Shown: positions 5,008 to 61,195 of the stretch, piece by piece | Position numbering within the stretch: position 1 is the stretch's first letter | Layout: each line of letters begins with the position of its first letter | Source of the DNA: Octopus sinensis | Taxonomy: Eukaryota | Reading direction: 5' to 3' | NCBI RefSeq assembly: GCF_006345805.1 | Contig: NC_043007.1 | Span: 12,834,001-12,898,000, forward strand | Length of the DNA stretch: 64,000 nt | Made by a program: the position numbers and the translations under genes | The notes under the pieces: model-generated | Database searches by the model: none | The model's input: only the letters and a program-made list of their open reading frames with translations | What the model was told of the DNA's origin: nothing

Positions 5008-5038
<31 letters not shown>

Positions 5039-16702: not shown

Positions 16703-16943
16703 GTAAATATGATTGTTTGTTAAAAGTTTGTGGGGAATAAGAAACTGTCATTGTTATATTTGAGATTTTAAGCACCATTTGAGCATAGCTGATGCCAATG
16801 TCAGTAGCACTTAAAAAGAACCATTCAAGCGTGGTCAATGCTAGTTCCACCTGGTGGCATGTGAAAAGCACCATTCGAGTATGGTTGATGCCAGTGCCAC
16901 CTGATTGACATGTAAAAGGCGCTGTTCAAGCATGGTCAATACT

Positions 16944-17175: not shown

Positions 17176-17394
17176 TAATGGCCAATACCAGTACTACCTG
17201 ACTTGCTCCCATGAGGGTAGCACATCAAAAGCACCATTTGAGCATGGTCGATGGTGGTGGTTTGTTTTGCTATAGTTAATTGTATATAGTATAGATATAT
17301 GTTTTGCTGTTTTAGTTAATTGCTTGTATAATTATAATTGTATATAGGGCAACCTGCTATACTTGAGGAGACCTGTTGAGTCAAGTACATCAAA

Positions 17395-17745
17395 ATCAAA
17401 ATCAAATGGAAATTGTAGTTGTGATACCCATGCTGGTGGCACGTAAAAAACATCATCCGAATATGGCTGATGCCAGTGCCTCCTTGACTGGCGTTCGTGC
17501 CAGTGGCACATAAAAAGCACCAACCGATCGTAGAAGTTGCCAGCCTCCTCTGGCTTCTGTGCTGGTGGCACATAAAAATCACCCCTACACTCATGGAGTG
17601 GTTGGCATTAGGAAGGGCATCCAGCTGTAGAAACACTGCCAGATCAGACTGGAGCCTGGTGCAGCCTCCTGGCTTCCCAGATCCCGGTCGAACTGTCCAA
17701 CCCATGCTAGCATGGAAAACAGACGTTAAACGACGACAACAACGT
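17395..17745 (+). mobile_element. Family B SINE-like repeat
   Basis: Body ending GACGTTAAACGACGAC. Confidence 0.8.
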
Positions 17746-17806
17746 CGTCGTTGTTGTTACATAATTACAGTTGTGTATGTTAGCTACTTGTTTGTAATAT
17801 AATTAA

Positions 17807-18020: not shown

Positions 18021-18122
18021 ATAATTAATCATATTTACTTGAAAAAATTCTTAATGAAGTAAACAAAATGGCTGACTATTTGCTTTTAAATAATCTGAAC
18101 ATTTTCTTTTTATCTTTTACAG

Positions 18123-28246: not shown

Positions 28247-28352
28247 ATACCTACAGATTCCAACATTCCAGCAATTCCAGACATTCCAGACATTCCACAC
28301 ATTCCAGCGATTCCAGGTATTCCAGACATCCACAAATTCAACACATTCCAGC
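28247..28352 (+). repeat. Degenerate (ACATTCCAG)n cap at the left end of the composite satellite
   Basis: CATTCCAGACATTCCAGACATTCCACACATTCC. Confidence 0.85.
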
Positions 28353-28440
28353 TATTTAAAAATTTTTGGTAAAAAATTTTTTGAAAGTTTTTTTGGAAAT
28401 TTTTGGTCAAAATATTTTTATTATTTTTGGTCAAAACTCT

Positions 28441-37400: not shown

Positions 37401-40400
37401 TAGCCGACCCAAATAGCCATGCCAAATAGCCAACCATAATAGCCAAGCCAAATAGCCTATCCAAATGCTTAGCCCGAATAGCCAACACAAATAGCACCCA
37501 AATAGCCAAGCCAAATAGCAAACCAAAATAGCTAACCTAAATAGCATACTTAAATAAGCCAAGCCAAATTGCCAAGTCAAATAGCACCCAAAAGCCAAAA
37601 GCCAATCCAAAACCAACTCAAATAGCTAACCTAATAGCCAACCCAAAGTTGGCTATTTGAGCTAGACAACCCAAATAGGCAAGCCAAATCGCCAAGCCAA
37701 ATAGCCAACCGAAATAGCAAACCCAATAGCCAACCGAAATAGCAAAGCCAAATAGCCAACTCAAATAGCAAACCCAAGTAGCCATCCAAAGAGCCAAGCC
37801 AAATAGCCAAACAAAATAGCCTAGCCACATAGCCAAGCCAAATAGCCACTCAAATATGGCATAGCTATTTGGGTTTGCTATTTGGCTTTGCATTTTGGAT
37901 TGGATATTTGGGTATGCTATTTGTGTTGGCTATTTGTCTTAGCTATTTGGCTAGGCTATTTGTCTTGGATATGTGGCTTGGCTATTTGGGGTTGGCTATT
38001 TGTGTTTGCTATTTGGGTTGGCAATTTGGGTTTGCTATGTGGCTTGGCAATTTGGCTTGGCTATTTGGGTTGGCTATTTTGGTTCGCTATTTGGCTTGGC
38101 TATTTGGCTTGGCTATTTGAATACGCTATTTGTGTTGGCTATTTGGCTAGGAAATTTGGCTTGGCTATTTGGCATGGCTATTTGGGTGTGCTATTTGGGT
38201 TGGCTATTCGGGTTAGCTATTTGGCTTAACTATTTGGCTATTTGCTATTTGGCTTGGCTTTTTGGCTAGGCTATTTGGCTTGGTCATTTGGCTTGGCTAT
38301 TTGGGTTAGCTATTTGAGTTGGCTATTTGGATTTGCTATTTGGGTTGGCTATTTGGCTAGGTTATTTGGGTTGGCTATTTGTGTTTGCTGTTTGGGTTGG
38401 CTGTTTTGGTTTGCTATTTGGCTTGGCTATTTGGCTTGGCTATTTGGGTTGACTATTTATGTTTGCTATTTGGGTTGGCTATTTGGCTTGCCTATTTGGT
38501 TTGGCTATTTGGCTTGCCTATTTGGCTTTGCTATTTGGCTAGGCTATTTGTGTTGGCTATTTGGGTTTGCTATTTTTGAGTTGGCTATTTGGCTTGGCTA
38601 TTTGGCTAGGCTATTTGTTTGGCTATTTGGGTTGGCTATTGGGGTTGGCTATTGGCTTTGCTATTTCGGTTGGCTATTTGGCATGGCGATTTGGCTGCCT
38701 ATTTGGGTGTGTCTTAGCTCAAATAGCCAACTTTGGGTTGGCTTTTGGTTAGCTAATTAGGTTGGCTATTTGGTTTCCTTTTTGGCTTGACTATTTGGCT
38801 TGGCTATTTGGCTTGGTCATTTGGCTTGGCTATTTTTTGGGTTGGCTTTTTGTGTTTGCTATTTGGGTTGGCTATTTGTGTTTCCTATTTGGGTTTGATA
38901 GTTGGCTTGGCTATTTGGCTAAGCTATTTGGATTGGCTATTTGGGTTTGCTTTTTGGCTTGGCAATTGGATTGGCTATTTGGGTTGGCTATATTGGTTTG
39001 GTTTTTGCGGCTTGGCTTATTTAAGTATGCTATTTAGGTTGGTTATTTTGGTTTGCTCTTTGGTTTGGCTATTTGGGTTGGCTATATGGTTATGCTATTT
39101 GTGTTGGCTATTTGGCTAAGCATTTGGCTAGGCTATTTGGCTTGGCTATTTGGCTTGGCTATTTTGGATATCTATTTGGGTTGGCTATTTGGGTTGGCTA
39201 TTTGGGTTGGCAATTTGGCTTGGCTTTTTGGGTTGGCTATTTGGGTATGCTATTTGTATTGGCTAATTGGCTTAGCTTTTTGGCTTGGCTATTTTTATTG
39301 ACTATTTGGGTTGCCTATTTGGCTTGGCTATTTCGGTTGGCTGTTTGGGTTGGCTTTTTGGATTGGCTTTTTGGGTTGGCTATTTGTGTTGGCTATTTGA
39401 CTTAGCTATTTGGCTAGGCTATTTGGCTTGGCTATTTGGGTTGGCTATTTGGGTTGGTTATTTGGGTTTGCTCTTTGGCTTGGCAATTTGGCTTGGCTAT
39501 TTGGGTTGGCTGTTTTGGTTTGCTCTTTGGCTTTGCTATTTGGGTTTGCTATTTGGGTATGCTATTTGTGTTGGCTATTTGGCTTGGCATTTGGCTAGGA
39601 AATTTGGCTGGGCAATTTGGCTTGGCTATTTTGCCCGGCTATTTGGCTTGGGTATTTGGGTTGGCTATTTGGGTTAGCTATTTGGCTTGGCTATTTCGGT
39701 TGACTATTTGGCTTAGCTATTTGACTAGGTTATTTGGGTTGGCTATTTGGGTTAACTATTTGAGTTGGCTATTTGGATTTGCTTTTTGGGTTGGCTAACA
39801 GCCAAATAGCCTCGCCAAATAGCTAAGACAAATAGTCACCCCAAAAAGCACACACAAATACCTAACCTAAATAGCCAAGCCAAATAGCGAAGCCAAAGAG
39901 TAAACCCAAAAAGCCAACCCAAACAGCCAAACCAAATAGCCGAGCCAAATAGCGAAGCCAAATACCCAACTCAAATAGCAAACCCAAATAGCCTAGCCAA
40001 AAAGCAAAGCCAAATAGCCAGACCAAATAGGCAAGCCAAATAGCCAACTCAAATAGCAAACACAAACAGCCAACCCAAATAGCCAACCCAAATAGCAAAC
40101 CCAAATAGCCAACCCAAATAGCCAACACAAATAGCCGAGCTGAATAGCCAAGCCAAATAGCAAACACTAATAGCAAACCCAAATAGCAAATACAAATAGC
40201 CAACCCAAATAGCCTAGCCAAATAGCCAACGCAAAAAGCAAATCCAAATAGCCAACTCAAATAGCCAACGCAAAAAGCAAATCCAAATAGCCAACTCAAA
40301 TAGACAACCCAAATAGCCGACCCAAATAGCTATGCCAAATAGCCAAGCCAAATAGCCAAGCCAAATTTCCTAGCCAAATCCTAAGCCAAATAAACAACAC

Positions 40401-43400
40401 AAATAGCATACTCAAATAGCCAACCAAATAGCCAAACCAAATAGCAAACCAAATAGCCAACCCAAATAGCTAACCCAATAGTCAAGCCAAATAGCTAACC
40501 CAAATAGCCAACAAAAATAGCCTACCAAATAGCCAACCAAAATAGCCTAGCCAATAGCCAAGCCAACTATCAACCCAAATAGGAAACACAAATAGCCAAC
40601 CCAAATAGCAAACACAAATAGCCAACCCAAATAGCAAGCCAAATGACCAAGCCAAATAGCCTAGCCAAAAGCAAAGCCAAAGCAAATAGCCAAATAGCCA
40701 ACCCAAATAGGAAGCCTAATAGCCAAACCAAATAGCCAACCCAAATAGCAAACCCAAATAGCCACACCAAATAGTCAAGCCAAAAAGCAAACCCAAATAG
40801 CCAACCCAAACAGCCAACCCCATAGCCAAGTCAAATAGCCTAGCCAATGCTTAGCCAATAGCCAACACAAATAGCATAACCAAATAGCCAACACAAAGCC
40901 AAGCCAAATAGCAAACCAAAATAGCAAACCAAAATCGCCAACCCAAAGAGCCAAGCCAAATTGCCAAGTCAAATAGCAAACCCAAAAAGCCAATTCAAAT
41001 AGCCAACACAAATAGCCGAGCCGAATAGCCAAGCCAAATAGCAAACACTAATAGCAAACCCAAATAGCCAAGCCAAATAGCAAACCAAATAGCCAACCCA
41101 AACAGCAAACACAAATAGCAACCCAAATAGCCTAGCCAAATAGCCAACGCAAAAAGTAATCCAAATAGCCAACTCAAATAGCTAACCCAAATAGCTAACC
41201 CGAATAGCCAACCCAAATAGCCGACCCAAATAGCCATGCCAAATAGCCAACCATAATAGCCAAGCCAAATAGCCTAGCCAAATGCTTAGCCCAAAATAGC
41301 CAAGCCAAATAGCAAACCAAAATAGCTAACCTAAATAGCATACTTAAATAAGCCAAGCCAAATTGCCAAGTCAAATAGCAAACCCAAAAAGCCAATCCAA
41401 ATAGCCAACTCAAATAGCTAACCTAAATAGCCAACCCAAAGTTGGCTATTTGAGCTCGACAACCCAAATAGGCAAGCCAAATCGCCAAGCCAAATAGCCA
41501 ACCGAAATAGCAAACCCAAATAGCCAACCGAAATAGCAAAGCCAAATAGCCAACTCAAATAGCAAACCCAAGTAGCCAATCCAAAGAGCCAAGCCAAATA
41601 GCCAAACAAAATAGCCTAGCCACATAGCCAAGCCAAATAGCCAACTCAAATATGGCATGGCTATTTGGGTTTGCTATTTGGCTTGGCATTTTGGATTGGA
41701 TATTTGGGTATGCTATTTGTGTTGGCTATTTGTCTTAGCTATTTGGCTAGGCTATTTGTCTTGGATATGTGGCTTGGCTATTTGGGGTTGGCTATTTGTG
41801 TTTGCTATTTGGGTTGGCAATTTGGGTTTGCTATGTGGCTTGGCAATTTGGCTTGGCTATTTGGGTTGGCTATTTTGGTTCGCTATTTGGCTTGGCTATT
41901 TGAGTACGCTATTTGTGTTGGCTATTTGGCTAGAAAATTTGGCTTGGCTATTTGGCATGGCTATTTGGGTGTGCTATTTGGGTTGGCTATTCGGGTTAGC
42001 TATTTGGCTTAACTATTTGGCTATTTGCTATTTGGCTTGGCTTTTTGGCTAGGCTATTTGGCTTGGTCATTTGGCTTGGCTATTTGGGTTAGCTTTTGAG
42101 TTGGCTATTTGGATTTGCTATTTGGGTTGGCTATTTGGCTAGGTTATTTGGGTTGGCTATTTGTGTTTGCTGTTTGGGTTGGCTGTTTTGGTTTGCTATT
42201 TGGCTTGGCTATTTGGCTTGGCTATTTGGGTTGACTATTTATGTTTGCTATTTGGGTTGGCTATTTGGCTTGCCTATTTGGTTTGGCTATTTGGCTTGCC
42301 TATTTGGCTTTGCTATTTGGCTAGGCTATTTGTGTTGGCTATTTGGGTTTGCTATTTGAGTTGGCTATTTGGCTTGGCTATTTGGCTAGGCTATTTGGTT
42401 TGGCTATTTGGGTTGGCTATTGGGGTTGGCTATTTGGCTTTGCTATTTCGGTTGGCTATTTGGCATGGCGATTTGGCTTGCCTATTTGGGTTGTCTAGCT
42501 CAAATAGCCAACTTTGGGTTGGCTATTTGGGTTAGCTAATTAGGTTGGCTATTTGGTTTCCTTTTTGGCTTGACTATTTGGCTTGGCTATTTTTGGATTT
42601 GCTATTTTGCTTGGCTATTTGGCTTGGTTTTTGGCTAGGCTATTTGGCTTGGTCATTTGGCTTGGCTATTTGGGTTGGCTTTTTGTGTTTGCTATTTGGG
42701 TTGGCTATTTGTGTTTCCTATTTGGGTTGGATAGTTGGCTTGGCTATTTGGCTAAGCTATTTGGATTGGCTATTTGGGTTTGCTATTTGGCTTGGCAATT
42801 TGGATTGGCTATTTGGGTTGGCTATATTGGTTTGGTTTTTGGCTTGGCTTATTTAAGTATGCTATTTAGGTTGGTTATTTTGGTTTGCTCTTTGGTTTGG
42901 CTATTTGGGTTGGCTATATGGTTATGCTATTTATGTTGGCTATTTGGCTAAGCATTTGGCTTGGCTATTTGGCTTGGCTATTTGGCTTGGCTATTTTGGA
43001 TATCTATTTGGGTTGGCTATTTGGGTTGGCAATTTGGCTTGGCTTTTTGGGTTGGCTATTTGGGTATGCTATTTGTATTGGCTAATTGGCTTAGCTTTTT
43101 GGCTTGGCTATTTTTATTGACTATTTGGGTTGCCTATTTGGCTTGGCTATTTCGGTTGGCTGTTTGGGTTGGCTTTTTGGATTGGCTTTTTGGGTTGGCT
43201 ATTTGTGTTGGCTATTTGGCTTAGCTATTTGGCTAGGCTATTTGGGTTGGCTATTTGGGTTGGCTATTTGGGTTGGTTATTTGGGTTTGCTCTTTGGCTT
43301 GGCAATTTGGCTTGGCTATTTGGTTGGCTGTTTTGGTTTGCTCTTTGGCTTTGCTCTTTGGGTTTGCTATTTGGGTATGCTATTTGTGTTGGCTATTTGG

Positions 43401-44604
43401 CTTGGCATTTGGCTAGGAAATTTGGCTGGGCAATTTGGCTTGGCTATTTGGCCCGGCTATTTGGCTTGGGTATTTGTGTTGGCTATTTGGGTTAGCTATT
43501 TGGCTTGTCTATTTCGGTTGACTATTTGGCTTAGCTATTTGACTAGGTTATTTGTGTTGGCTATTTGGGTTAACTATTTGAGTTGGCTATTTGGATTTGC
43601 TTTTTGGGTTGGCTAACAGCCAAATAGCCTCGCCAAATAGCTAAGACAAATAGCCATCCCAAAAAGCACACACAAATAGCTAACCCAAATAGCCAAGCCA
43701 AATAGTCAAGCCAAAGTGTAAACCCAAATAGCCAACCGAAACAGCCAAACCAAATAGCCTAGCCAAATAGGCAAGCCAAATAGCCAACTCAAATAGCAAA
43801 CCCAAATGGCCAACATAAATAGCCTAGCCAAATAGCAAACCCAAATAGGCAAGCCAAATAGCCAAACCAAATAGCAAACCCAAATAGCCAACCCAAATAG
43901 CCAACCCAAATTGCTATATGACTTGGCTATTTGGCTTGGCTATTTGGGATGGCTATTTGGCTTAGCTATTTGGCTAGGTTTTTTGGGTTGGCTATTTGGG
44001 TTTGCTATTTGGCTTGGCAATTTGGCTTGGCTATTTGGGTTGGCTATTTTGGGTTGCTATTTGACTTGGCTATTTGGCTTGGCTATTTGGGTTTGCTATT
44101 GGTGTTGGCTATTTTGCTTGGCTTTTTGGCTTGGCTATTTCGCTTGGCTGTTTGGGTTGGCGATTTGGGTTGGCTATTCGGGTTAGCTATTTGGTTGGCT
44201 ATTTGGCATTGCTATTTGTGTTGGCTATTTGTGTTGGCTTTTTGGGTTTGCTATTTGGGTTAGCTATTTAGGTTGGCTATTTGGCTTTGCAGTTTGGGTT
44301 GGCCATTTGGGCTTCCTATTTGGGTTGGCTATTTGGCTATTTGGTATTTGGCTTGGCTATTTGGCTTGGCTTTTTGGCTAGTCTATTTAGCTTGGTCATG
44401 TGGCTTGGATATTTGGGTTAGCTATTTGTGTATCCCATTTGGGTTGGATAGTTGGCTTAGCTATTTTGCTAGGCTATTTGGGTAGGTTATTTGGGTTTGC
44501 TATTTGGGTGGGCTATTTGGGTTTGCTTTTTGGCTTGGCTATTTGGTTTGGCTATTTGGTTTGGCTATTTGGGTTGGCTATTTGGGTTAGCTATTTGGCT
44601 TAGC
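28441..44604. repeat. 14-bp satellite (TTGGS TTKGC TATT)n in 11 alternating-orientation blocks, ~3.8-kb higher-order unit
   Basis: Junction TTGGCTAACAGCCAA centred at 28831, 32714, 35964, 39798, 43616; junction CTCAAATATGGCAT at ~30739, 34661, 37856, 41651; last flip at 43911. Confidence 0.95.
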
Positions 44605-47283
44605 TCTGTCGGCACCCTCTTTGATCTATGTCGGTACCCTCTTGGATCTCTGTCGGCACCCTCTTTGATCTATGTCGGTACCCTCTTTGATCTATGTCGG
44701 CATCCTCTTTGATCTCTGTCGACACTCTCTTTGATCTCTATCGGCACTCTCTTTCATCTCTGTCGGTACCCTCTTTGATCTCTGTCGGCACCCTCTTTGA
44801 TCTGTGTCAGCACTCCTCTTTGATCTCTGTCAACACTCTCTTTGATCTCTGTCGGCACCCTCTCTGATCTTTGTCGACATCCTCTTCGATCTCTGTCGGC
44901 ACCCTCTTTGAACTCTGTCGGCACCCTCTTTGATCTCTGTCAGCACCCTCTTTGATCTATATCGGCATTCTCTTTGATCTCTGTCGGCACCCTCTTTGAT
45001 CTGTGTCAACACTCCTCTTTTATCTGCGTAAACACTCCTCTTTGATCTCTGTCTGCACCCTCTTTGATCTTTGTGAACACTCCTCTTTGATCTCTGTCGG
45101 CATCATCTTTGATCTCTGTCGACACCCTCTTTGATCTCTGTCGGCACCCTCTTTGATCTCTGTCGACACCCTCTTTGACCTCTGTCGGCACCCTCTGACA
45201 TTCCTGACATTTGAACCGGTTCGATCAGATTTGAACCAGTTTGAACCAGCTTGATCCTGTTTGAACCGGTTTGAACCGGTTTGATCCGGTTTGAGCCGGT
45301 TTGATTTGGTTTGATCCGGTTTGAACCGGTTTAATCTGGTTTGAACCCGTTTGATCCGGTTTGAACCGGTTTGAACCGGTTTGATCGGATTTGTACCGGT
45401 TTGTCAGCACCGTCTTTGATCTTTGTCGGCACACTCATTGATCTCTGTCGGCACCGTCTTTGATATTTGTCGCCACACTCTTTGATCTCTGCCGGCACCG
45501 TCTTCGGTCTCTGTCGGCACACTCTTTGCTCTCTGTCGGCACCGTCTTTGATCTCTGACATTCCTCACATTCCTCACATTTGAGACGTTCCTGACATTTG
45601 AACTGGTTCCATCAGGCTTGATCCAGTTTGATCCGGTTTGAACGGGTTTGATCCGTCTTGATCCGGTTTGATTCGGTTTGTACCGGTTTGAACAGGTTTG
45701 ATCCAGTTTATACCGGTTTGATCCGGTTTGAACCGGTTTGATCTGGTGTGTACCGGTTTGTCGGCAACATCTTTGATCTTTGTAAGTACACCCTTGGATC
45801 TCTTTCGGCACCGTCTTTGATCTCCGTCGGCACCGTCTTTGATCTCTGTCGGCAAAGTCTTTGATCTCTGTCTGCACCATCTTTGATCTCTGTCGGCACC
45901 GTCTTTGATCTCTCACATTCCTTACATTCCAATTATTCCTGAACTTCCAGACATTCCTGACATTCCAAACATTCATGACAATCTAGACATTCCAGACATT
46001 CCTGACATTCTTTGATCTATATCGGCACTCTCTTTAATCACTTTGATCTGTGTCAACACCCCTCTTTGATCTATGTCGGCACCCTCTTTGATCTCTGTCG
46101 GCACCCTCTTTAATCTCTGTCGGCACCCTCTTTGATCTCTGTCGGCACCCTCTTTGATATCTGTCGAAAGCCTCTTTGATCTATGTCGGCACTCTCTTTG
46201 ATCTATCTCGGTACCCTCTTGGATCTATGTCGGCACCTTCTTTGATCTATGTCGGTACCCTCTTTGATCTATGTCGGCACCCTCTTTGATCTATGTCGGC
46301 ATCCTCTTTGATCTGTGTCAACACTCCTCTTTGATCTCTTTCGGCACCGTCTTTGATCTCTGTCGGCAACCTCTTTGATCTGTGTGAACACTCCTCTTTG
46401 ATCTGTGTGAACATTCCTCTTTGATCTCTGTCGGCACACTCTTTGATCTCTGTTGACATCCTCTTCGATCTCTGTCGGCACCCTCTTTGAACTCTGTCGG
46501 CATCCTCTTTGATCTCTCTCGGCACCATCTTTGATCTATGTCAGCGCCCTCTTCGATCTCTGTCGGCCTCATCTTTGATCTCTGTAAACACACACTTTGA
46601 TCTTTGTCGGAACACTCTTTGATCTCTGTCGGCACCGTCTTTGATCTCTGACATTCCTCACATTCCAGACATTCCTGACATTCCAGAAATTCCGGACATT
46701 CCAGACATTCCAGACATTCCTGACATTCCTGACATTTGAACCGGTTCGATCAGGCTTGATACAGTTTGAAACAATTTGATCCGGTTTGAACCGGTTTGAT
46801 CTGGTTTGAACCGGTTTGAACCAATTTGATCCGGTTTGAACCGGTTTGAAACGGTTTGTACCGGTTTGATACGGTTTGAACCGGTTTCATCTGGTTATAT
46901 CCGGTTTCAACCGGTTTGACCCGGTCTCAACCGGTTTGGACCGGTCTGAACCGGTTTGATTCGGTTTGTACTGGTTTGTCGGCACCGTCTTTGATCTTTG
47001 TCGGCACACTCTTTGATCTCTGTCGGCATCGTCTTTGATCCATGACATTCCTCACATTCCGAATTCCAGACATTCCTGAAATTGCAGACATTCCTGACAT
47101 TCAAGACATTCCTGACATTCCAGACATTCCAGACATTCCTGACATTCCAGACATTCCTGACATTCCAGACATTCCGGACATTCCTGACATTCCCGACATT
47201 CCTGACATTTGAACCGGTTCGATCAAGCTTGATCCAGTTTGAACCGTTTTGACCAGGTTTTAACCGGTTTGAACCGGTTTGAT
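44605..47283 (+). repeat. Tripartite nested satellite: A (22 bp CCCTCTTTGATCTCTGTCGGCA), B (9 bp ACATTCCWG), C (10 bp TTTGAWCCGG)
   Basis: Blocks read directly: A44606, B45196, C45212, A45403, B45556, C45598, A45761, B45913, A46009, B46649, C46736, A46978, B47042, C47209. Confidence 0.95.
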
Positions 47284-49764
47284 ATGTTAGGGATGTCAGG
47301 AATGTCAGGAATGTCAGAGATCAATGACGGTGCCGACAGAGATCAAAGAGGGTGCTGACAAAGATCAAAGACGGTGCCGACAAAACGGTCCAAATCTTAT
47401 CAAACCGGTTCAAACCGGATTAAATCTCAGGAATGTCAGGAATGTCTGGAATGTCAGGAATGTCAGGAATGTCTGGAATGTCAGGAATGTCTGGAATGTC
47501 AGGAACGTCAGGAATGTCTGGAATGTCAGGAATGTCAGGAATGCCTGGAATGTCAGGAATGTCAGGAATCAAACCGGATTAAATCTCACGAATGTCAGGA
47601 ATGTATGGAATGTATGGAATGTCTGAGATCAAAGACAGTGCCGACAGTGATCAAAGAGTGTGCAAACAAAGATCAAAGACGGTGCCGATAAACCGGTCCA
47701 AACTGCATCAAACCGGTTCAAACTGAATGAAACCGGTTCAAATATCAGGAATGTCAAAAATGTCAGGAACGTCAGGAATGTGTGGAATGTCAGGAATGTC
47801 AGGAATGTGTGGAATGTCAGGAATGACAGGAATGTGTGGAATGTCAGGAATGTCAGGAATGTCATATATCAAAGACGGTGCCGACAGAGGTCTAAGAGTG
47901 TGTCGACTTAGATCTAAGACGGTGGCGACAAATGTCAGGAATGTCTGGAATGTATGGAATGTCAGAGATCAAAGACGGTGCAAACAGAGACCAAAGTGTG
48001 TGCCAACAAAGATCAAATATGGTGACGATAAACCGGTCCAAACCGCATCAAACCGGTTCAAACGGGATTAAAACGGTTCAAACCAATTCAAACCTGATCA
48101 AACCGGTTCAAATGTCAGAAATGTCAGGAATGTCAGGAACGTCTGGAACGTCAGTAATGTCTGGAATGTCAGGAATGTCAGGAATGTCTGGAATATGAGG
48201 AATGTCATAGATCAAAGACGGTGCCGACAGAGATCTAGAGTGTGCCGACCAAGATGAAAGACGGAGGCGAGCAACCGGTTCAAACTAGATCAAACCGGTT
48301 CAAACCGGATTAAACCATTTCAAACCGGACCAAACCAGTTCAAACCGGATCATACCTGATCAAACTGGTTAAAATGTCAGGAATGTCAGGAATGTCTGGA
48401 ATGTCAGGAATGTCATAGATCAAAGACGGTGCCGACAGAGATCAAAGAGTGTTTCGACAAAGATCAAAGACGGTTAGGACAAACCGGTTCAAACCGGATC
48501 AAATGTCAGGAATGTCTGGAATGTTAGGAATGTCTGGAATGTCAGGAATGTTTGGAATGTCAGGAATGTCTGGAATGTCAGGAATGTCTGGAATGTCAGG
48601 AATGTCTGGAATGTCAGGAATGTCTAGAATGTCAGGAATGTCTGGATTTATGGAATGTCAGGAATGTGTGGAATGTCAGGAATGCCTGGAATGTCAGGAT
48701 GTCAGGATGTCTGGAATGTCAGGAATGTCTGTAATGTCTGGAATGTCAGGAATGTTTGGAATGTCAGGAATGTCTGGAATGTCAGGAATATCAGAGATCA
48801 AAGACAGTGTCGACATAGATCAAAGAGTGTGCCGACAAAGATCAAAGAGGGTGCCGACAAATGTCAGGAATGTCGACAAACCGGTCAAAACCGGATCAAA
48901 CTGTCTTTGATCTCCAGTTCGAACCGGATAAAACCGGTTCAAATGTCAGGAATGTCAGGAATGTCTGGAATGTAAGTAATGTTAGTAATGTCAGGAATGT
49001 CTGGAATGTCAGGAATGTCTGGAATATGAGGAATGTCATAGATCAAAGACAGTGCCGACAGAGATCTAGAGTGTGCCGACCAAGATGAAAGACGGAGGCG
49101 AACAACCGGTTCAAACTAGATCAAACCGGTTCAAACCGGATTAAACCATTTCAAACCGGACCAAACCAGTTCAAACCGGATCATACCTGATCAAACTGGT
49201 TAAAATGTCAGGAATGTCATGAATGTCATAGATCAAAGACGGTGCCGACAGAGATCAAAGAGTGTTTCGATCAAAGACGGTTCCGACAAACCGGTTCAAA
49301 CCGGATCATACCTGATCAAACTGGTTAAAATGTCAGGAATGTCATGAATGTCATAGATCAAAGACGGTGCCGACAGAGATCAAAGAGTGTTTCGATCAAA
49401 GACGGTTCCGACAAACCGGTTCAAACCGGATCAAACCGGAACAAACTGGATCAAACCGGTTTCAACCTGGTCAAACTGGTTCAAACCGGATCAAACCGGT
49501 TTATACCGCGTGAAACCGGTTCAAATGTCTGGAATGTCAGGAATGTTAGGAATGTCAGGAATGTCTGGAATGTCAGGAATGTCTGGAATGTTAGGAATGT
49601 CTGGAATGTCAGGAATGTCTGGAATGTCGGGAATATCAGGAATGTCAGAGATCAAAGACGGTGCCGACAGAGATCAAAGAGGGTGCCGACAAAGATCAAA
49701 GACGGTGTCGACAAACCGGTTTGAACCACATCAAACCGGTTCAAACTGGTTCAAAACGGTGCAA
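47284..49764 (-). repeat. Same tripartite satellite in inverted orientation
   Basis: GGAATGTCA, AGATCAAAGACGGTGCCGAC and AAACCGGTTC blocks joined by the reverse-complement junctions. Confidence 0.95.
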
Positions 49765-50410
49765 AGAGGGGAGGAAGAAATGTCGAACATTCCAGAGAGG
49801 GGGATTTGAGAAGTGAAGGTGAAGAAGGGAAGGAAGGAATGTTGAACATTCCAGAGAGGGGGATTTGAGAAATACAGGGGAGGAAGGGAAGGAGGGAATG
49901 TTGAACATTCCACAAAGAGGGATTTGAGAAATAAAGGGGAGGAAGGGAAGGAGGGAATGTTGAATATTCCAGAGAGGGGGATTTGAGAAGTGAAGGGGAG
50001 GAAGAGGAGGATGAAATGTTGAATATTCCAGAGAGGGGGATTATAGAAGTGAAGGGGAGGAAGGAATGTTGAACATTCCTGAGAAGGGGATTTTAGAAGT
50101 GAAAGGGAGGAAGGGATTGAAGGAATGTTGAAAATTCCAGAGAGGGGGATTTCACGAATGAAGGGAGGAAGCAATGTTGAACATACCACAGGGGGATTTG
50201 AGAAGTGAAGGGGAAGAAGGAATGTTTAACATTCCAGTGAGTGGGATTTTAGGAGAGAGGGGGAGGAAGGAATGTTGAACATTCCAGAGAGGGGGATTTG
50301 AGAAGTGAAGGGGTGGAAGGAATTTTTAACATTCCATAGAGAGGGATTTGAGAAGTGAAGGGGAGGAAGGGGAGGAAGGAATGTTGAACATTCCAGAGAT
50401 GGGGATTGGT
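49765..50410 (+). repeat. Purine-rich minisatellite, ~12 copies of a 48-60-bp unit
   Basis: GGAATGTTGAACATTCCAGAGAGGGGGATTTGAGAAGTGAAGGGGAGGAA repeated. Confidence 0.92.
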
Positions 50411-50570
50411 GAAGTTCCACACTTTCTAGAAATTCCACACATTCCACACATCCCACTCATTCCAGTCATTATAAACATTCTAGAAATTCCACACATTCCA
50501 AACATTCATGCCATTCCGTGACATTCCATACCTAGACGTGACGTGACATTCCATTTAACGTCATTTGATA
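50411..50570 (+). repeat. Right cap of the composite: CATTCC repeats grading into ACGTGACGTGAC / TTTAACGTCA
   Basis: Read directly; same motifs as 60528-61195. Confidence 0.75.
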
Positions 50571-53120: not shown

Positions 53121-53170
53121 AGCTTCTACAGGACTAGAACTGTTTCATTCAACAGAATCTTCAGGAAGCT
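53121..53170 (-). ncRNA. Type I hammerhead motif (left arm)
   Basis: Reverse complement AGCTTC-CTGAAGA-TTCTGTTGAAT-GAAAC AG TTCTAGTC CTGT A-GAAGCT. Confidence 0.65.
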
Positions 53171-53508
53171 AGTTAACAAGAATTGTATTGGCATTTATAC
53201 ATTTAGGCAGGTTTAAAGGGGTGGTGGTGGGGGACTTTTTGGGGGTAGGCATAGCGCAAAATATCATACTTGGGGGAGTGGTCAAGGAGTCAGTGGTAAA
53301 TTAGATAAAAGAATAAATAAAAAAATATATATATATATATATATTAAAGAATAGAGTTTTAGGTAAATAAGGAGATTCTCACTTATACCTATACACATAT
53401 GTATACATATATACACACACATACATACATATATACATACACACATACATACACACACACACATATACATATATATACACATACACATACATATACATAT
53501 CTACACAT

Positions 53509-53545
<37 letters not shown>

Positions 53546-54119
53546 CACTCACTCACATGCATACACGTATACACACATGTATATATACACAAACGACCAC
53601 ACATACATATACACACAGAAAAATATATATACATACATACACACATACACACATGCACACACAGCACACTAGTCCCTATATACACATATATACACATACA
53701 CACACATATTACTACACATACATACACATACATATATATTATATATATATATATATTATACATATGTGTACCTATACATACCTACACATACACACATATA
53801 TATACATACAATACAGACCCATTCCCTAATTTTAATTTTATTATCTTCATTTATTACTTTTGTTATCTTTGATCGCTGGTCCCAAGGATCTTGGCTATGA
53901 CAGCAAGTCCATTTATCTGTCTACTTGAAAACAAGCACTCATTCACGCACGCACACTCATTAGCACGTACACTCACTCATTCGTACACTCATACACATAC
54001 ACGCACGCACGCACGCGTTATATTCATACATACATACATCTACATACATTCACGTATATACACATACGTACGCGTACCTACAGATTCATGTCTACACTCT
54101 TAGAAGGCTAGTCTGTACA

Positions 54120-54278
54120 GGAGGCCATACCTGCTGTGACCTCTGCATATCGGAGAGCCTAGAGATCTTGTTCGCCAAAGGCCCTCTCCTTAACAAATTC
54201 TCAGAACACTCCCCAAATTGCATGCATAAGAAGTATGCGAACTACAAGAACTATAGACCTACCCGGCAACCAGATTGA
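54120..54278 (+). pseudogene. C-terminal fragment of a Penelope GIY-YIG endonuclease ORF
   Basis: GGHTCCDLCISESLEILFAKGPLLNKFSEHSPNCMHKK...stop matches the PLE terminal motif CxLCxxE.L.I....LLNK.SE...C.H. Not in the ORF track. Confidence 0.75.
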
Positions 54279-54493
54279 TGACACCCCACCCACAACCCCC
54301 CCAATCCACCGTTCCCCAAGCCCCCCGATTACCTTTTCTCCTAAGACCTTTCACATATTGTATGTGCACGCTTGTATATGTGTATCGTATATATGTATAG
54401 AAATGTATGGGTATATAAGAATATACGCATGTATTATGTGTGTGTGTGTGTGTGTGTATGTATGTAAAAATATATATATATATATGTATGTGC

Positions 54494-54526
<33 letters not shown>

Positions 54527-54948
54527 TATATGTATATATGTATGTATTATATATATGTGTGTATGCATATGTATGTGTATATGTATGTGTGTATGTATGT
54601 GTATGTATGTATAAAATATTATATAATTAGGGCTTAGTAAAATAATTACTTTGCCACATACTGAACTTTCTAGAAATAGCAGCCAAAAAAGTTTTTTTTA
54701 GCCTCTTCCACTACTTAGAGAATATTTTCCCTCAGACATTGTTTACTCAAAATAATAATGGTCCTTTTACATACTGAATACTTGGTGAAATTGATTAATA
54801 ACTAATTAACTTTACCCTCAATTGTTGATATATGTATGTGTGTGTATATATATGTATATGTGTATATATATATGTACATGTATGTATATGTATGTATGTA
54901 TATATATGTGTATGTATGTATATATATATATATGTATGTGTGTGTGTG

Positions 54949-54989
<41 letters not shown>

Positions 54990-55245
54990 ATATATATATG
55001 TATGTATGTGTGTGTATATGTGTATTATGTATATATTATATATATATATATATATGTGTATATGTATATGTATGTGTGTGTGTATATGTAGATATGTGTA
55101 TATAATGAGTGTACGCGAGTATGTCGATGTATATGTAGGTATGTAGAGTTATGTGTACGTGCATGTATGTGAGTGTAGATACAAATTGTAGATGTGTATA
55201 TATATATGTGTGTGTATATATACATGTTATATAGTGTATGTATGG

Positions 55246-55305
<60 letters not shown>

Positions 55306-55902
55306 ATATATATATAATATATATTATATATATATATGAATATGCAGTATGTAGAGATATAAGTATGTGCATGTGTATATATATGTATAGGTATGTGTAT
55401 GTGTATGTATGTATATATATATGTGTTGTGTATGTATGCATATATGTATGTATGTATGTATGTATATATTGTATGTATATATGTGTGTAAGTGTGTGCAT
55501 ATATGTATATGTAAGTGTGTGTGCGTGTATGAGTATGTATGTATGTTTGCACACATGTATATGTGTGTGTGTGTGTATATATGGATGCGCGTGTGTGTGT
55601 GTGTGGTGTATGGGTACGCATGTACATGTGTATGTGCGTGTATGTGTATATGTGTATGTATGTATGTGTGTGCGTATATTTGTATATTGTATGTATATGT
55701 ATGTATGTGTGTATATATATATATATAATGTGTGTGTGTATGTGTATAAATGTATGTATGTATGGATGTATGGATGTATGTATGTATGTATACGTATGTA
55801 TGTGTATGTGTGTATATGTATGTATGTGTATGTGTGTATATATATGTGTGTATATATATTTGTGTATATATATATATATGTATATATGTGTGTATATATA
55901 TG

Positions 55903-55951
<49 letters not shown>

Positions 55952-56408
55952 ATTTGTATGTAGGTGTATATGTATGTGTGTATATATATATATTTATTGG
56001 TGTATATGTATAGACTAGCCTTCTAAGAGTGTAGACATGAATCTGTAGGTACGCGTACGTATGTGTATATACGTGAATGTATGTAGATGTATGTATGTAT
56101 GAATATAACGCGTGCGTGCGTGTATGTGTATGAGTGTACGAATGAGTGAGTGTACGTGCTAATGAGTGTGCGTGCGTGAATGAGTGCTTGTTTTCAAGTA
56201 GACAGATAAATGGACTTGCTGTCATAGCCAAGATGTTTGTGACCAGCGATCAAAGATAACAAAAGTAATAAATGAAGATAATAAAATTAAAATTAGGGAA
56301 TGGGTCTGTATTTGTATGTATATATATGTGTGTATGTGTAGGTATGTATAGGTACACATATGTATATATATATAATATATATATAATATATATATATATA
56401 TTATATAT

Positions 56409-56438
<30 letters not shown>

Positions 56439-56440
<2 letters not shown>

Positions 56441-56560
56441 ATTAATCAATATAGGGTGGCAAGGAAATTTTGTAGAATTTTATTGCCACCAGGCCCAGTG
56501 GGCCGCTGGTGGCAATAAAATTCTACAAAATTTTCCTTGCCACCCTATATTGATTAATTA
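56439..56560. repeat. Near-perfect hairpin (~55-bp arms)
   Basis: TAATTAATCAATATAGGGTGGCAAGGAAATTTTGTAGAATTTTATTGCCACCAG / its reverse complement. Confidence 0.92.
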
Positions 56561-56713
56561 TGAATTTTTTGGTTAATTCCGTAATGGAATCGACGGCTGA
56601 TATTTATTTGCTGCCGATAAATTTGGCGCGAGTGCGACGATTTGAAATTTTAGGTCAGATATTGACTTGGCAAGATTGGGTATGCCTCGTGTAAATATCT
56701 TTCCGACTTGAGC

Positions 56714-56822
56714 TATTTCTTGCTGAAGAATCCGAGGGCTTATGGAAGATTGGCTTGATTTAATTTAATCAGGTTAGTTTACCATTAAACAGCGGATGAA
56801 ACGGTATACCGTACAAGAAATA
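56714..56822 (+). ncRNA. Intact type I hammerhead ribozyme
   Basis: TATTTCTTG-CTGAAGA-ATCCG...CGGAT-GAAAC GGTATACC GT A-CAAGAAATA; 9-bp stem I, 5-bp stem II, palindromic stem III. Confidence 0.85.
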
Positions 56823-57517
56823 CAGGGTAAATGTTTTTTTAATTTTCTCCTGTTTACGGAATTAATCTTTATTTGCGGTAGAAGCTTTGGCTGTTATTTC
56901 TAGTGGGTGAATGGCCTATTATGGCCGTTCCTTAATTGTTAATATATATATATATATATAATATATATATATATATATGTTAGTGTATGTATGTGTATGT
57001 ATATATGTGTGTGTATGTGTATATATGTGTATATAGGGACTAGTGTGCGTGTGTGCATGTGTGTGTGTGTGTATGTATATATATTTTTTTTTCTGTGTGT
57101 ATATGTATGTGTGGTCGTTTGTGTATATATACATGCGTGTATACGTGTATGCATGTGAGTGAGTGTATGTATATATATATATATATATGTGGTATATATG
57201 TAGATATGTGTATGTGTGTATGTGTTTATATATGTATATGTGTGTGTGTGTATGTATGTGTGCATGTTATATGTATGTATGTGTGTGTATAGGTATAAGT
57301 GAGATTCTCCTTATTTACCTAAAACTCTATTCTTTTTTATATATATTTTTATTTATTTTTTTTTTTTTTATTTATTCTTTTATCTAATTTACCACTGACT
57401 CCTTGACCACTCCCCCAAGTATGATATTTTGCGCTATGCCTACCCCCAAAAAGTCCCCCACCACCACCCCTTTAAACCTGCCTAAATGTATAAATGCCAA
57501 TACAATTCTTGTTAACT

Positions 57518-57568
57518 AGCTTCCTGAAGATTTCTCTTGAATGAAACAGTTCTAGTCCTGTAGAAGCT
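57518..57568 (+). ncRNA. Type I hammerhead motif (right arm)
   Basis: AGCTTC-CTGAAGA-TTTCTCTTGAAT-GAAAC AG TTCTAGTC CTGT A-GAAGCT; 6-bp stem I, 4-bp stem III, GUA site after 57562. Confidence 0.68.
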
Positions 57569-60527: not shown

Positions 60528-61195
60528 CATTCTGGAATGTCAGGAATGTCTGTGATGCAAGGAAAATCTGGAATCTCAGGAATGTCTGGAATGTCATTTA
60601 ACGTCATGTAACGTCAGTCATGCTCCTTCATTTAACATCACCTAACGTCGTTTAACGGCACGTCATATAACGACAGTTAACGGCACATCATGCCACGTAA
60701 TTTAACGTCACTTAAAGTCACGTCATTTCAAGCCATCCAACGACACGTCAATTTACGTCATTTAACGCAATGTCAAATAACATCACGTTAAACGACGTGT
60801 CTGGAATGTCAGGAATGGAATGTCTGGAATATCTGCAATGTCTGGAATGCCTGGAATGTCAGGAATGTTTGGAATGTCTGGAATATCCGGAATGTTAGGA
60901 ATTTCTTGAATGTCTAGAATATTCGGAATGTCAGGAATCTGGAATGTCTGGAATTTCTGGAATGTCTTGAATGTCAAGAATTTCTGGAATGTCATGAATG
61001 TTTGGAATGTCAGGAATATCTGGAATGTGAAGAACGTCAGGAATGTCTGGAATGTCATTTAACGTCACATCATGCTCCTTCATTTAACATCACCTAGCGT
61101 CGTTTAACGGCACGTCATTTAACGTCATTCAACGTCACATCAAGCCACGTAATTTAACGTCATTTAATGTCACGTCATTTCAAGCCATCCAACGC
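60528..61195. repeat. Small composite satellite: (GGAATGTCW)n blocks alternating with (TTTAACGTCAC)n blocks
   Basis: Two copies about 453 bp apart (CATGCTCCTTCATTTAACATCACC at 60619 and 61071). Confidence 0.9.

What the first reader, a model, noticed from the sequence alone, without database searches (positions are those of the whole stretch)
44605..49764. Satellite whose three monomers each match a signalling transcription-factor site, at cooperative spacing
Seen: three micro-repeats alternate. A (22 bp) carries AGATCAAAG followed a few bp later by GTGCCGAC. B is ACATTCC on a strict 9-bp period. C is AACCGGTT/ATCCGGTT on a 10-bp period. Established: AGATCAAAG is the TCF/LEF HMG site, and invertebrate TCFs use a C-clamp to bind a nearby GCCG-core Helper site. 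CATTCC is the TEAD/Scalloped MCAT site, and tandem sites 9 bp apart bind cooperatively. AACCGGTT is the Grainyhead/CP2 site, and CP2 binds CNRG-N6-CNRG (10-bp period). Inference: the array resembles a natural multimerised Wnt plus Hippo plus Grainyhead reporter with on the order of 100 or more sites of each type. It could act as a TF sink, a homotypic enhancer, or a selfish satellite that recruits these factors. Three independent monomers matching three consensus sites with the right spacing is hard to dismiss, though each motif is short.
Basis: partly seen in the sequence, partly recalled or inferred. Interest (0 to 1): 0.88.

Follow-up and report, generated by a model that had tools for sequence, protein, structure and literature searches.

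The report
Compound satellite carrying TEAD, TCF, Grainyhead motifs
This is a real, genome-dispersed compound satellite whose three tiny repeat units spell textbook TCF, TEAD and Grainyhead/CP2 binding sites at the published spacings, but nothing here shows that the factors bind it or that it does anything, and human Satellite 3 is already a known TEAD-binding satellite.

Summary
Observation confirmed. Window 44605-49764 is a 5.2-kb compound satellite of a 22-bp (A), 9-bp (B) and 10-bp (C) unit. The units always run B(n)-A(k)-C(m), in two arms of opposite orientation that meet at about 47283. Exact counts are 74 AGATCAAAG, 120 ACATTCC and 36 AACCGGTT (plus 21 ATCCGGTT).

The motif and spacing claims hold against the literature:
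- B is a concatenated "Tead double motif" (RMATTCC-NN-RMATTCC).
- C fits AACCGGTT and CNRG-N6-CNRG.
- A fits CTTTGWWS plus a 6/7 Helper-like GCCGACA four bases away.

The family is dispersed over at least nine chromosome-scale contigs (2,567 exact A units genome-wide) and spread as a composite unit. No carrier transposon was found.

Function is not shown. Variable positions lie outside the motif cores (p=0.006). That test is biased by how the motifs were picked and is driven by sub-repeat alternations. Core-mutant copies are amplified at some loci. Unrelated neighbouring satellites also spell exact MEF2 and octamer sites. The family is only about 0.013% of the genome.

Best reading: a slippage-driven satellite that could bind these factors, possibly bound passively. 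The closest precedent is HSat3-TEAD. Interest is moderate.

The parts
44605..47283 (-). Left arm of the compound satellite. Units A, B and C read on the minus strand. A is expanded here (runs of 17, 6, 6, 5, 13 and 10 copies).
47284..49764 (+). Right arm, in opposite orientation. Regular B(n)-A1A2A3-C(m) higher-order units.
44606..45203 (-). A array (22-bp unit AGATCAAAGnnnGTGCCGACAG), about 23 copies
45213..45416 (-). C array (10-bp unit AAACCGGTTC / AAACCGGATC), about 20 copies
45423..45554 (-). A array, 6 copies
45555..45599 (-). B array (9-bp unit GAATGTCWG, i.e. ACATTCC on the other strand), 4 copies
45600..45759 (-). C array, 15 copies
45802..45911 (-). A array, 5 copies
45912..46010 (-). 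B array, 10 copies
46019..46647 (-). A array, about 24 copies
46648..46737 (-). B array, 10 copies
46738..46991 (-). C array, 24 copies
46998..47041 (-). A array, 2-3 copies
47042..47210 (-). B array, 18 copies
47211..47280 (-). C array, 6 copies. It ends at the orientation switch (...ccggtttgatatgttagggatgtcagg...).
47291..47383 (+). B x3 followed by the A triplet
47402..47691 (+). C x2, B x16, C x1, B x4, A triplet
47700..48031 (+). C x3, B x14, degenerate A triplet, B x3, A triplet
48040..48482 (+). C x7, B x11, A, C x9, B x5, A triplet. 48083-48382 is 95% identical to 48914-49213, a recent internal duplication.
48491..48860 (+). C x1, B x31 (the longest B run), A triplet
48868..49104 (+). 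B x1, C x4 (with a small inverted A fragment at 48905-48913), B x11, A
49113..49414 (+). C x9, B x3, A, C x3, B x3, A. Includes a 125-bp unit repeated 2.3 times at 97% identity.
49423..49764 (+). C x9, B x14, A triplet, C x3; right end of the array
49767..50407 (+). Associated 59-bp repeat (about 11 copies). It contains the palindrome GGAATGTTGAACATTCC. The same repeat flanks family arrays on contig C13.
28257..28356 (+). Short B-like 9-bp array (ATTCCAGAC) at the left edge of the 22-kb satellite island
50415..50507 (+). Short B-like 9-bp array (TTCCACACA) at the right edge of the island
60531..61056 (-). Further B arrays (60531-60596 and 60798-61056), here alternating with a different partner repeat (TAACGTCA-type)

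Best explanation
The region is one locus of a low-copy, genome-dispersed compound (nested) satellite family. Its ancestral higher-order unit is B(n)-A1-A2-A3-C(m): a run of 9-mers, a 66-bp triplet of 22-mers, and a run of 10-mers. Composite units were copied to many chromosomes. At each locus the three micro-arrays then expanded and contracted independently, by replication slippage and unequal exchange, with local duplications and inversions.

The units do spell a TCF site with a Helper-like GC element, a Tead double motif, and Grainyhead/CP2 sites at the published spacings. The DNA should therefore be able to bind those factors wherever chromatin allows; TEAD is the most likely, as on human HSat3.

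I judge the motif content to be incidental or at most passively exploited (opportunistic binding), not a selected Wnt+Hippo+Grainyhead device.
- Shown: anatomy, grammar, dispersal, motif and spacing matches.
- Inferred: the slippage/unequal-exchange mechanism, the capacity to bind, and the absence of a selected function.
For: Grammar and orientation:
- B->A->C order in both arms.
- The same order in very regular [A3 B~24 C~12] higher-order repeats on C17, C9506 and C8469.

Dispersal:
- At least 894 matches to a B+A+C probe, on C4, C8, C11, C13, C17 and unplaced contigs.
- 2,567 exact AGATCAAAGnnnGTGCCGAC genome-wide against 0 for the reversed control, also on C1, C2 and C3.
- The diagnostic A1 (ACGG..CAG) / A2 (AGTG..CAA) / A3 (ACGG..CAA) triplet followed by C recurs on C11, C13, C17 and C8875. 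Composite units, not single monomers, were therefore dispersed.

Turnover:
- Copy numbers of A, B and C differ widely between loci: A about 130 copies with no C on C4; B alone on C13:66.79M; A and B in opposite relative orientation on C13:54.49M.
- A 95%-identical 300-nt internal duplication and a 97%-identical 125-bp duplication lie in the window.

Signs of no obligatory constraint:
- The C17 higher-order repeat carries amplified core mutants AGATCAAGG and AGATCAAAT.
- G9 of CAAAG is non-consensus in at least 15% of copies at 3 of 11 loci.
- Only about 54% of C units have T at position 8, which AACCGGTT requires.

Base rate of motif matches:
- 11 of 18 unrelated tandem repeats in the fetched DNA match something in a 130-consensus list.
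- These include exact MEF2 CTAWWWWTAG, octamer ATGCAAAT, and GAGA and NF-Y consensus matches.
- I could also find a Smad CAGA core (CCAGACA) in the B dimer and a CHR/LIN54 TTYGAA in C.
- HSat3 alone has 42 of 828 JASPAR motifs enriched at least 10-fold (PMC11526998).

Small size:
- By extrapolation about 0.35 Mb, about 8% of the genome's 19,670 AACCGGTT sites, and about 4% of the ACATTCC sites expected from genome size.
Against: - Three unrelated monomers (no significant similarity to each other) all hit strong consensus sites. With my 130-motif list the joint chance for random monomers is 4e-5 at the observed stringency and 3.5e-3 at 12 bits or more each.
- The periods add information: 9 bp is exactly the strictly spaced Tead double motif, 10 bp fits CP2, and a Helper-like GCCGACA sits 4 bp from the HMG site, within the functional range.
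- Locus-level variable positions fall outside the cores (Mann-Whitney p=0.006).
- The C and G that Grhl contacts most (C4, G7) are invariant at 8 of 8 loci, while the central CpG varies.
- The CpG inside the Helper-like element is invariant at 11 of 11 loci. The CpG in C decays at 4-6 of 8 loci.
- CpG-decay variants CTGG and CCAG still satisfy CNRG.

These patterns are what selection for binding would give. Ascertainment and CpG mutability also predict most of them.
Confidence: 0.6

Rival explanations
1. Transcription-factor platform or depot. The arrays are bound in vivo by TEAD (cooperatively on the 9-bp register), TCF (HMG plus C-clamp) and Grainyhead/CP2. They buffer or localise these signalling effectors, a convergent cephalopod counterpart of HSat3-TEAD/YAP platforms and TEAD1 depots.
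For: - Exact Tead double-motif register: 88 ACATTCC-NN-ACATTCC pairs in the window (PMC12008814).
- Exact CTTTGWWS plus a 6/7 Helper 4 bp away.
- AACCGGTT and CNRG-N6-CNRG.
- Precedent that satellites with clustered MCAT sites bind TEAD even in heterochromatin and act as depots (PMC11526998; PMC13335116).
- Variable positions avoid the cores.
- Low joint chance for random monomers.
Against: - No binding, accessibility or expression data.
- The family is about 0.013% of the genome. By extrapolation it holds about 4% of the expected ACATTCC sites and about 8% of AACCGGTT sites, against 72% of GGAATG cores in HSat3.
- Core-mutant copies are amplified.
- The modules occur separately and in other combinations at other loci, so the three-way combination is not obligatory.
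- The conservation test is biased by ascertainment.
Confidence: 0.22
2. Homotypic enhancer. The arrays act as signal-responsive cis-regulatory modules for neighbouring genes, a natural multimerised Wnt/Hippo/Grainyhead reporter.
For: Multimerised sites of these kinds drive synthetic reporters. Tead double motifs are highly active elements. HMG-Helper pairs activate in most configurations.
Against: - Arrays sit next to other bulk satellites (a 16-kb 13-mer array and a 59-mer array) and at contig ends, not at a consistent position relative to genes.
- The only clear exon in the window lies 25 kb away.
- Copy number, orientation and module content vary freely between loci.
- AACCGGTT is genome-wide about 2.2-fold rarer than its CpG-free reverse, and the C-unit CpG decays to TG/CA. 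This fits germline methylation better than protected regulatory CpGs.
Confidence: 0.05
3. Transposon-derived satellite. The composite unit is the internal tandem-repeat region of a mobile element, which explains its dispersal. The motifs would be remnants of that element's regulatory region.
For: The composite B-A1A2A3-C unit is found on many chromosomes with conserved sub-unit order. Satellites born from transposons are a known route (review PMC12628747, listed but not read).
Against: The 1.5-kb flanks of arrays at 14 loci share no common sequence apart from short (50-190 bp) dispersed-repeat matches and the 59-bp repeat. Array ends fall at different points of the unit. No transposase-like ORF was seen next to the window array.
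Confidence: 0.1
4. Assembly artefact. The alternation and inversions are products of a noisy long-read assembly, not of the genome.
For:
- Several arrays end contigs.
- The neighbourhood is rich in inverted structures, including a 100%-complementary palindrome at 53156-53325 / 57363-57532.
Against: - The same units and grammar recur at dozens of independent loci.
- The two arms are not mirror images.
- In the adjacent 13-mer array, opposite-strand neighbour blocks are only about 80% alike while same-strand blocks are 93-97% alike. A read-through (missed-adapter) artefact would give the opposite.
- Copy numbers and the exact inversion point may still be unreliable.
Confidence: 0.03

Closest known systems
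Human Satellite 3 (GGAAT/CATTCC)n as a TEAD/YAP and multi-factor binding platform (Franklin et al., PMC11526998) and TEAD1 depots on pericentromeric MCAT clusters (Wang et al., PMC13335116)
   Same: A tandem satellite whose unit regenerates the TEAD core GGAATG at very high density. Several other factor motifs sit in the same satellite. Proposed roles are sink, depot or localisation.
   Different: - HSat3 is a megabase-scale pericentromeric 5-mer satellite holding about 72% of all GGAATG cores, and binding is demonstrated.
- This family is about 0.35 Mb, dispersed in kb-scale arrays, and has a 9-bp unit giving the exact Tead double-motif register.
- Here the other motifs lie in separate interleaved modules (A and C), not in the same unit.
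- Binding is untested.
Tead double motif (RMATTCC-NN-RMATTCC; Dalal et al., PMC12008814) and the tandem MCAT/Sph sites bound cooperatively by TEF-1/Scalloped
   Same: Unit B in tandem is ACATTCC-WG-ACATTCC with 9 bp start to start, identical in register and orientation to the strictly spaced double motif.
   Different: The known elements are pairs inside enhancers. Here there are runs of up to 31 units (hundreds at other loci) inside a satellite. Cooperative filling of long arrays has not been tested.
Bipartite HMG-Helper sites of C-clamp TCFs (Chang 2008; Archbold 2014, PMC4154663; Hoverter 2014, PMC4267635)
   Same: A CTTTGATC HMG site with a GC-rich GCCG-core element 4 bp away on the opposite strand, repeated every 22 bp.
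   Different: - The Helper match is imperfect: GCCGACA against GCCGCCR, and 5/6 of RCCGCC.
- The site matches only 7/10 of the fly SCTTTGWSWW.
- My reading of the orientation as 'Akimbo' could not be checked against the paper's figure.
- Known Wnt-responsive modules have a few pairs, not arrays.
Grainyhead / CP2 sites (AACCGGTT; CNRG-N5/6-CNRG; Ming et al., PMC5829564)
   Same: Unit C gives AACCGGTT and a CCGG every 10 bp. The two bases contacted most strongly (first C, second G) are the invariant ones.
   Different: About half of the units are AACCGGAT. The central CpG is decaying. No array-type Grh/CP2 target is known.
Ordinary compound or nested satellites with higher-order repeats, and factor-site-bearing mouse major satellite (Pax3/Pax9; review PMC9324158 listed, plus my own recollection of Bulut-Karslioglu 2012)
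   Same: Head-to-tail arrays, higher-order units, locus-specific homogenisation, inversions, and factor sites present in the monomer.
   Different: Three very short units alternate in a fixed order. The family is low-copy and dispersed, not in large heterochromatic blocks.

Membership tests
Satellite / nested tandem-repeat family | Head-to-tail repetition of defined units well above chance | tested here: met
   TRF periods 22, 9 and 10 with 0-2% indels. 74 AGATCAAAG against 0.6 expected.
Satellite / nested tandem-repeat family | Higher-order repeat structure and the same units at several genomic loci | tested here: met
   B-A-C grammar. [A3 B~24 C~12]n on C17. Conserved A1-A2-A3 triplet on four contigs. 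2,567 exact A units genome-wide.
Transcription-factor-binding satellite platform (HSat3 type) | The monomer regenerates a factor's consensus at high density | tested here: met
   120 ACATTCC, 74 AGATCAAAG and 36 AACCGGTT in 5.2 kb.
Transcription-factor-binding satellite platform (HSat3 type) | The satellite holds a large share of the genome's sites for that factor | tested here: inconclusive
   By extrapolation about 1,600 of 19,670 AACCGGTT sites (about 8%) and about 13,700 ACATTCC sites.
Transcription-factor-binding satellite platform (HSat3 type) | Demonstrated occupancy by the factor in cells | not testable with these tools
   Needs CUT&RUN, DiMeLo-seq or imaging.
Tead double motif | Two RMATTCC sites in direct orientation separated by exactly 2 bp | tested here: met
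   88 exact ACATTCC-NN-ACATTCC pairs in the window. Definition from PMC12008814.
Bipartite TCF site (HMG + Helper) | HMG site matching CTTTGWWS / SCTTTGWSWW | tested here: met
   CTTTGATC is 8/8 of CTTTGWWS, but TCTTTGATCT is only 7/10 of the fly consensus.
Bipartite TCF site (HMG + Helper) | Helper site GCCGCCR (or RCCGCC) close to the HMG site | tested here: inconclusive
   GCCGACA is 6/7, GCCGAC is 5/6, and the short form RCCG is present. The gap is 4 bp. The paper reports that a nearby Helper in any orientation helps, and that all seven bases were tested for full activity.
Bipartite TCF site (HMG + Helper) | A TCF with a C-clamp is encoded by this genome | not tested
Expected from general knowledge of invertebrate TCFs.
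Grainyhead / CP2 site | AACCGGTT palindrome, with the first C and second G critical | tested here: met
   36 exact sites. C4 and G7 are invariant at 8 of 8 loci. T8 is present in only about 54% of units.
Grainyhead / CP2 site | CNRG-N5/6-CNRG direct repeats | tested here: met
   77 triple matches against 0.8 expected.
Transposon-borne satellite | Arrays bounded by recurrent element sequence (termini, terminal inverted repeats, target-site duplications, coding region) | tested here: not met
   No shared flanks in an all-against-all BLAST of 1.5-kb flanks from 14 loci.
Selected cis-regulatory element | Substitutions avoid the functional cores beyond the neutral expectation | tested here: inconclusive
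   Core less variable than non-core, p=0.006. The result is driven by sub-repeat alternations at A11, A12, A22 and B8. It is biased because a motif can only be recognised in the invariant part. CpG mutability explains the pattern in C.

The most novel reading that the evidence does not exclude
A cephalopod has independently evolved a modular satellite whose three interleaved micro-arrays are high-affinity, correctly spaced landing pads for the nuclear effectors of Hippo (TEAD double motif), Wnt (TCF HMG+Helper) and the epithelial factor Grainyhead/CP2. On this reading the arrays are bound in vivo and buffer or compartmentalise these factors. Factor-depot satellites of the HSat3-TEAD kind would then be a convergent, general solution and not a human peculiarity.
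Probability: 0.15. Interest if true: 0.8.

Novelty: new member of a known kind. Interest (0 to 1): 0.45.

Why it matters
If the arrays are bound, this would be the first non-mammalian, independently evolved counterpart of the recently described HSat3-TEAD platforms. It would also have a cleaner design, with separate modules per factor and the exact cooperative register. That would let the 'satellite as transcription-factor depot' idea be tested comparatively.

If they are not bound, the case is a useful caution. Short satellite units in this genome quite often spell textbook binding sites: MEF2, octamer and GAGA examples lie within the same few hundred kb. Motif matches in satellites therefore need an empirical null before they are read as function.

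Tried and rejected
- **Coding repeat.** Long ORFs cross the arrays. They are artefacts of stop-free periodic sequence. Periods of 22 and 10 are not multiples of three, and there is no gene context.
- **Structured RNA.** No Rfam family reaches its threshold anywhere in the window.
- **Carrier transposon.** Flanks of 14 loci share nothing consistent.
- **Missed-adapter or palindromic read artefact for the neighbouring 13-mer zigzag.** Rejected: opposite-strand neighbour blocks are only about 80% alike, same-strand blocks 93-97%.
- **Common descent of A, B and C, which would remove the independence of the three matches.** No significant similarity; A against the C dimer gives p=0.06.
- **CpG decay in the Grainyhead core as evidence against function.** I first read it that way. 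The decay products CTGG and CCAG still fit CNRG, and the strongly contacted C and G are invariant, so it does not discriminate.
- **Identifying the organism.** A homology search with the BTB exon gave two unnamed hits. Only the genome size points to Octopus sinensis.
- **Relatives elsewhere.** No match to the A dimer in metagenome contigs or to the B tetramer in viral contigs.
- **Literature.** Searches for octopus or cephalopod satellite descriptions found nothing on this family.

Full report
**What is there.** Window 44605-49764 is entirely tandem repeat. TRF finds three periods alternating: 22 bp (AGATCAAAGnnnGTGCCGACAG on one strand), 9 bp (GAATGTCWG, i.e. ACATTCC on the other strand) and 10 bp (AAACCGGTTC / AAACCGGATC). 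Indels are 0-2%.

- Exact counts inside the region are 74 AGATCAAAG, 42 GTGCCGAC, 120 ACATTCC, 36 AACCGGTT and 21 ATCCGGTT.
- AGATCAAAG, GTGCCGAC and AACCGGTT occur nowhere else in the 64 kb.
- Dinucleotide shuffles expect 0.6 AGATCAAAG, 0 ACATTCC-NN-ACATTCC pairs (88 seen) and 0.8 triple CNRG-N6-CNRG (77 seen).
- Tokenising gives about 88 A, 162 B and 116 C units in 52 blocks.

The blocks follow a fixed grammar, B(n) then A(k) then C(m) then B again. The array has two arms of opposite orientation that meet at about 47283. They are not mirror images: the left arm has long A runs, while the right arm has regular units with exactly three A copies.

Those three copies are distinct and ordered: A1 (..ACGG..CAG), A2 (..AGTG..CAA), A3 (..ACGG..CAA). 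B alternates A/T at position 8, giving an 18-bp dimer. C alternates T/A at position 8, giving a 20-bp dimer, so only about half of the C units are AACCGGTT. A 300-nt stretch is duplicated at 95% identity 831 bp away, and a 125-bp unit is repeated at 97%, which indicates recent turnover.

The array sits in a 22-kb satellite island. To its left is a 16-kb 13-mer array. To its right is a 59-bp repeat containing GGAATGTTGAACATTCC. Short B-like arrays lie at both edges of the island, at 28257-28356 and 50415-50507.

**The family in the genome.** The window is C11:12834001-12898000 of a 2,719,151,902-base assembly in 13,516 contigs. That size fits the PacBio+Hi-C Octopus sinensis assembly, but I could not confirm the species.

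- A 246-bp B+A+C probe finds at least 894 matches on C4, C8, C11, C13, C17 and unplaced contigs.
- The pattern AGATCAAAGnnnGTGCCGAC occurs 2,567 times against 0 for the reversed control, also on C1, C2 and C3.
- In 16 fetched 10-kb stretches, the cleanest arrays (C17:14.50M and two near-identical unplaced contigs) are [A3 B~24 C~12] repeated about 12 times.
- Other loci have A about 130 copies plus B with no C (C4), B alone (C13:66.79M), or A and B in opposite relative orientation (C13:54.49M).
- The A1-A2-A3-then-C order is the same on C11, C13, C17 and C8875, so whole composite units were dispersed.
- Flanks of 14 loci share nothing except short dispersed-repeat matches and, at three loci, the 59-bp repeat. 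I found no carrier element.
- Scaling from the fetched loci gives roughly 6,800 AGATCAAAG, 13,700 ACATTCC and 1,600 AACCGGTT in the family, about 0.35 Mb or 0.013% of the genome. This scaling is biased towards C-rich loci.
- The whole genome has 19,670 AACCGGTT against 43,540 of the CpG-free reversed word.

**Do the motif claims hold?** Yes, at the level of sequence, checked against papers.

[quoted passage not shown] In flies the consensus sequences are SCTTTGWSWW and GCCGCCR. A short RCCG form and a GCCGCY form exist in human. The best configurations are AK6 and FF0, but a nearby Helper in any orientation improves binding (PMC4154663).
- *Unit A.* It gives CTTTGATC (8/8; 7/10 of the fly form) and, 4 bp away on the other strand, GCCGACA (6/7). 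I read this as the divergent 'Akimbo' arrangement but could not check the figure.
- *TEAD.* The Tead double motif is two strictly spaced sites, RMATTCC-NN-RMATTCC. A 1-bp insertion or deletion lowers cooperativity, and the contact residues are conserved in Scalloped (PMC12008814). Cooperative binding has been seen on tandem MCAT templates (PMC5876656).
- *Unit B.* In tandem it is exactly this register.
- *Grainyhead/CP2.* Grhl dimers bind AACCGGTT, with the first C and second G most critical. CP2 tetramers bind CNRG-N5/6-CNRG (PMC5829564).
- *Unit C.* It fits both.

- Random monomers of 22, 9 and 10 bp reach the observed stringency with probabilities 0.083, 0.040 and 0.012. The joint probability is 4e-5, or 3.5e-3 if 12 bits each is accepted.
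- A real library is several times larger, which would raise these figures by one to two orders of magnitude.
- Real satellites here do match: 11 of 18 unrelated tandem repeats in the fetched DNA hit something. These include exact MEF2 (CTATTTATAG) and octamer (ATTTGCAT) sites in arrays adjacent to a family locus, plus GAGA and NF-Y consensus matches.
- I could add two more 'signalling' matches to the same units after the fact: a Smad CAGA core in the B dimer and CHR/LIN54 in C.

The triple match with fitting periods is notable but not compelling.

- The most variable positions are A11 (74%), A12 (27%), A22 (24%), A20 (18%), B8 (48%), C8 (46%) and the central CpG of C (15-17%, mostly C to T and G to A).
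- Counting loci where a non-consensus base reaches 15%, core positions are less variable than non-core ones (Mann-Whitney p=0.006).
- A1-A8 are essentially invariant. C4 and G7 of the Grainyhead site are invariant at 8 of 8 loci. The Helper-like CpG is invariant at 11 of 11 loci.

1. The signal comes from positions that define the sub-repeat alternations (A1/A2/A3 and the B and C dimers). Without them, core and spacer look alike.
2. A motif can only be recognised in the invariant part of a unit, so the test is biased by ascertainment.
3. CpG hypermutability alone predicts the pattern in C.

Against strict constraint, the C17 higher-order repeat has amplified AGATCAAGG and AGATCAAAT copies, and G9 is degraded at 3 of 11 loci. 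I call the test inconclusive.

**Mechanism.** The best-supported account is an ordinary one. A composite unit was copied to many sites by an unknown route. Each micro-array then grew or shrank by slippage and unequal exchange, with local duplication and inversion.

Because the units are good sites at the right spacing, binding of TEAD in particular is biochemically plausible wherever chromatin permits. HSat3 and pericentromeric MCAT clusters show this in human cells. Whether it happens, and whether it matters, cannot be decided from sequence. The family's small share of genomic sites argues against a strong sink effect.

**Comparison and novelty.** It works like, and may be a small dispersed analogue of, factor-binding satellites. 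It meets the sequence definitions of the Tead double motif and of the Grh/CP2 site, and it partly meets that of the bipartite TCF site. It is not shown to be a member of the functional class, because occupancy is untested. I file it as a new member of a known kind, a compound satellite with factor-site content. I found no prior description of this family.

**Limits.** Genome-wide counts for B and C, a larger empirical null, and checks for the factor genes could therefore not be made. No other cephalopod genome was available.

Noticed in passing
window 28442-44605: A 16-kb array of a 13-bp unit (CCAAATAGCCAAC) flips strand about every 1.9 kb. Same-strand blocks are 93-97% identical with identical junctions, while opposite-strand neighbours are only about 80% alike. 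It is therefore a 3.9-kb higher-order unit made of two inverted 13-mer arrays, repeated about four times, and not a read-through artefact.
   Followed up: partly
window 49767-50407; L014 6423-10000; L015 4-4619; L025 flanks: A 59-bp repeat carries the palindrome GGAATGTTGAACATTCC (two inverted TEAD cores). It adjoins family arrays at three loci and forms an array of more than 7 kb on C13.
   Followed up: partly
window 53156-57532: A large near-perfect palindrome. Arms 53156-53325 / 57363-57532 are 100% complementary, and 53810-54012 / 56110-56312 are 99%. It lies in AT-rich microsatellite sequence. It could be real or an assembly product.
   Followed up: no
window 60531-61180: A second compound satellite. 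B arrays (GGAATGTCW) alternate with a different partner made of TAACGTCA / TAACGGCA-type repeats (CRE-half and Myb-like words). B therefore combines with several partner repeats.
   Followed up: no
L026 (C13:56622000-56631999) 1-5087 and 6831-9905: Three other satellites sit next to a family array. A 13-mer and a 20-mer contain exact MEF2 sites (CTATTTATAG / CTATTTTTAG), and a 21-mer contains an exact octamer (ATTTGCAT).
   Followed up: partly
window 18099-19145 (+): A 348-codon open frame encodes a BTB/POZ-domain protein fragment (best hit 60% identity, Pfam PF00651). It is the only clear exon seen in the window and lies about 25 kb from the array.
   Followed up: partly
window 2487-2855, 6335-6832, 8166-8320, 16814-16940, 17316-17756: Copies of a dispersed element with internal 50-66-bp tandem repeats (GCCAGTGGCACATAAAAAGC...). 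They share translated stretches (..GKPGGCTRLQSDLAVFLQLDALPNANHS..). Probably a SINE or transposon family.
   Followed up: no
whole genome: AACCGGTT occurs 19,670 times against 43,540 for its CpG-free reversal TTGGCCAA. This 2.2-fold deficit is consistent with genome-wide CpG depletion.
   Followed up: no
L020 (C17:24899000-24908999) 5370-10000: A 23-bp variant of unit A (TGATCTTTGTCGGCACTCCTCTT) forms an array of about 200 copies. The A module therefore has length variants that still contain CTTTGATC.
   Followed up: no
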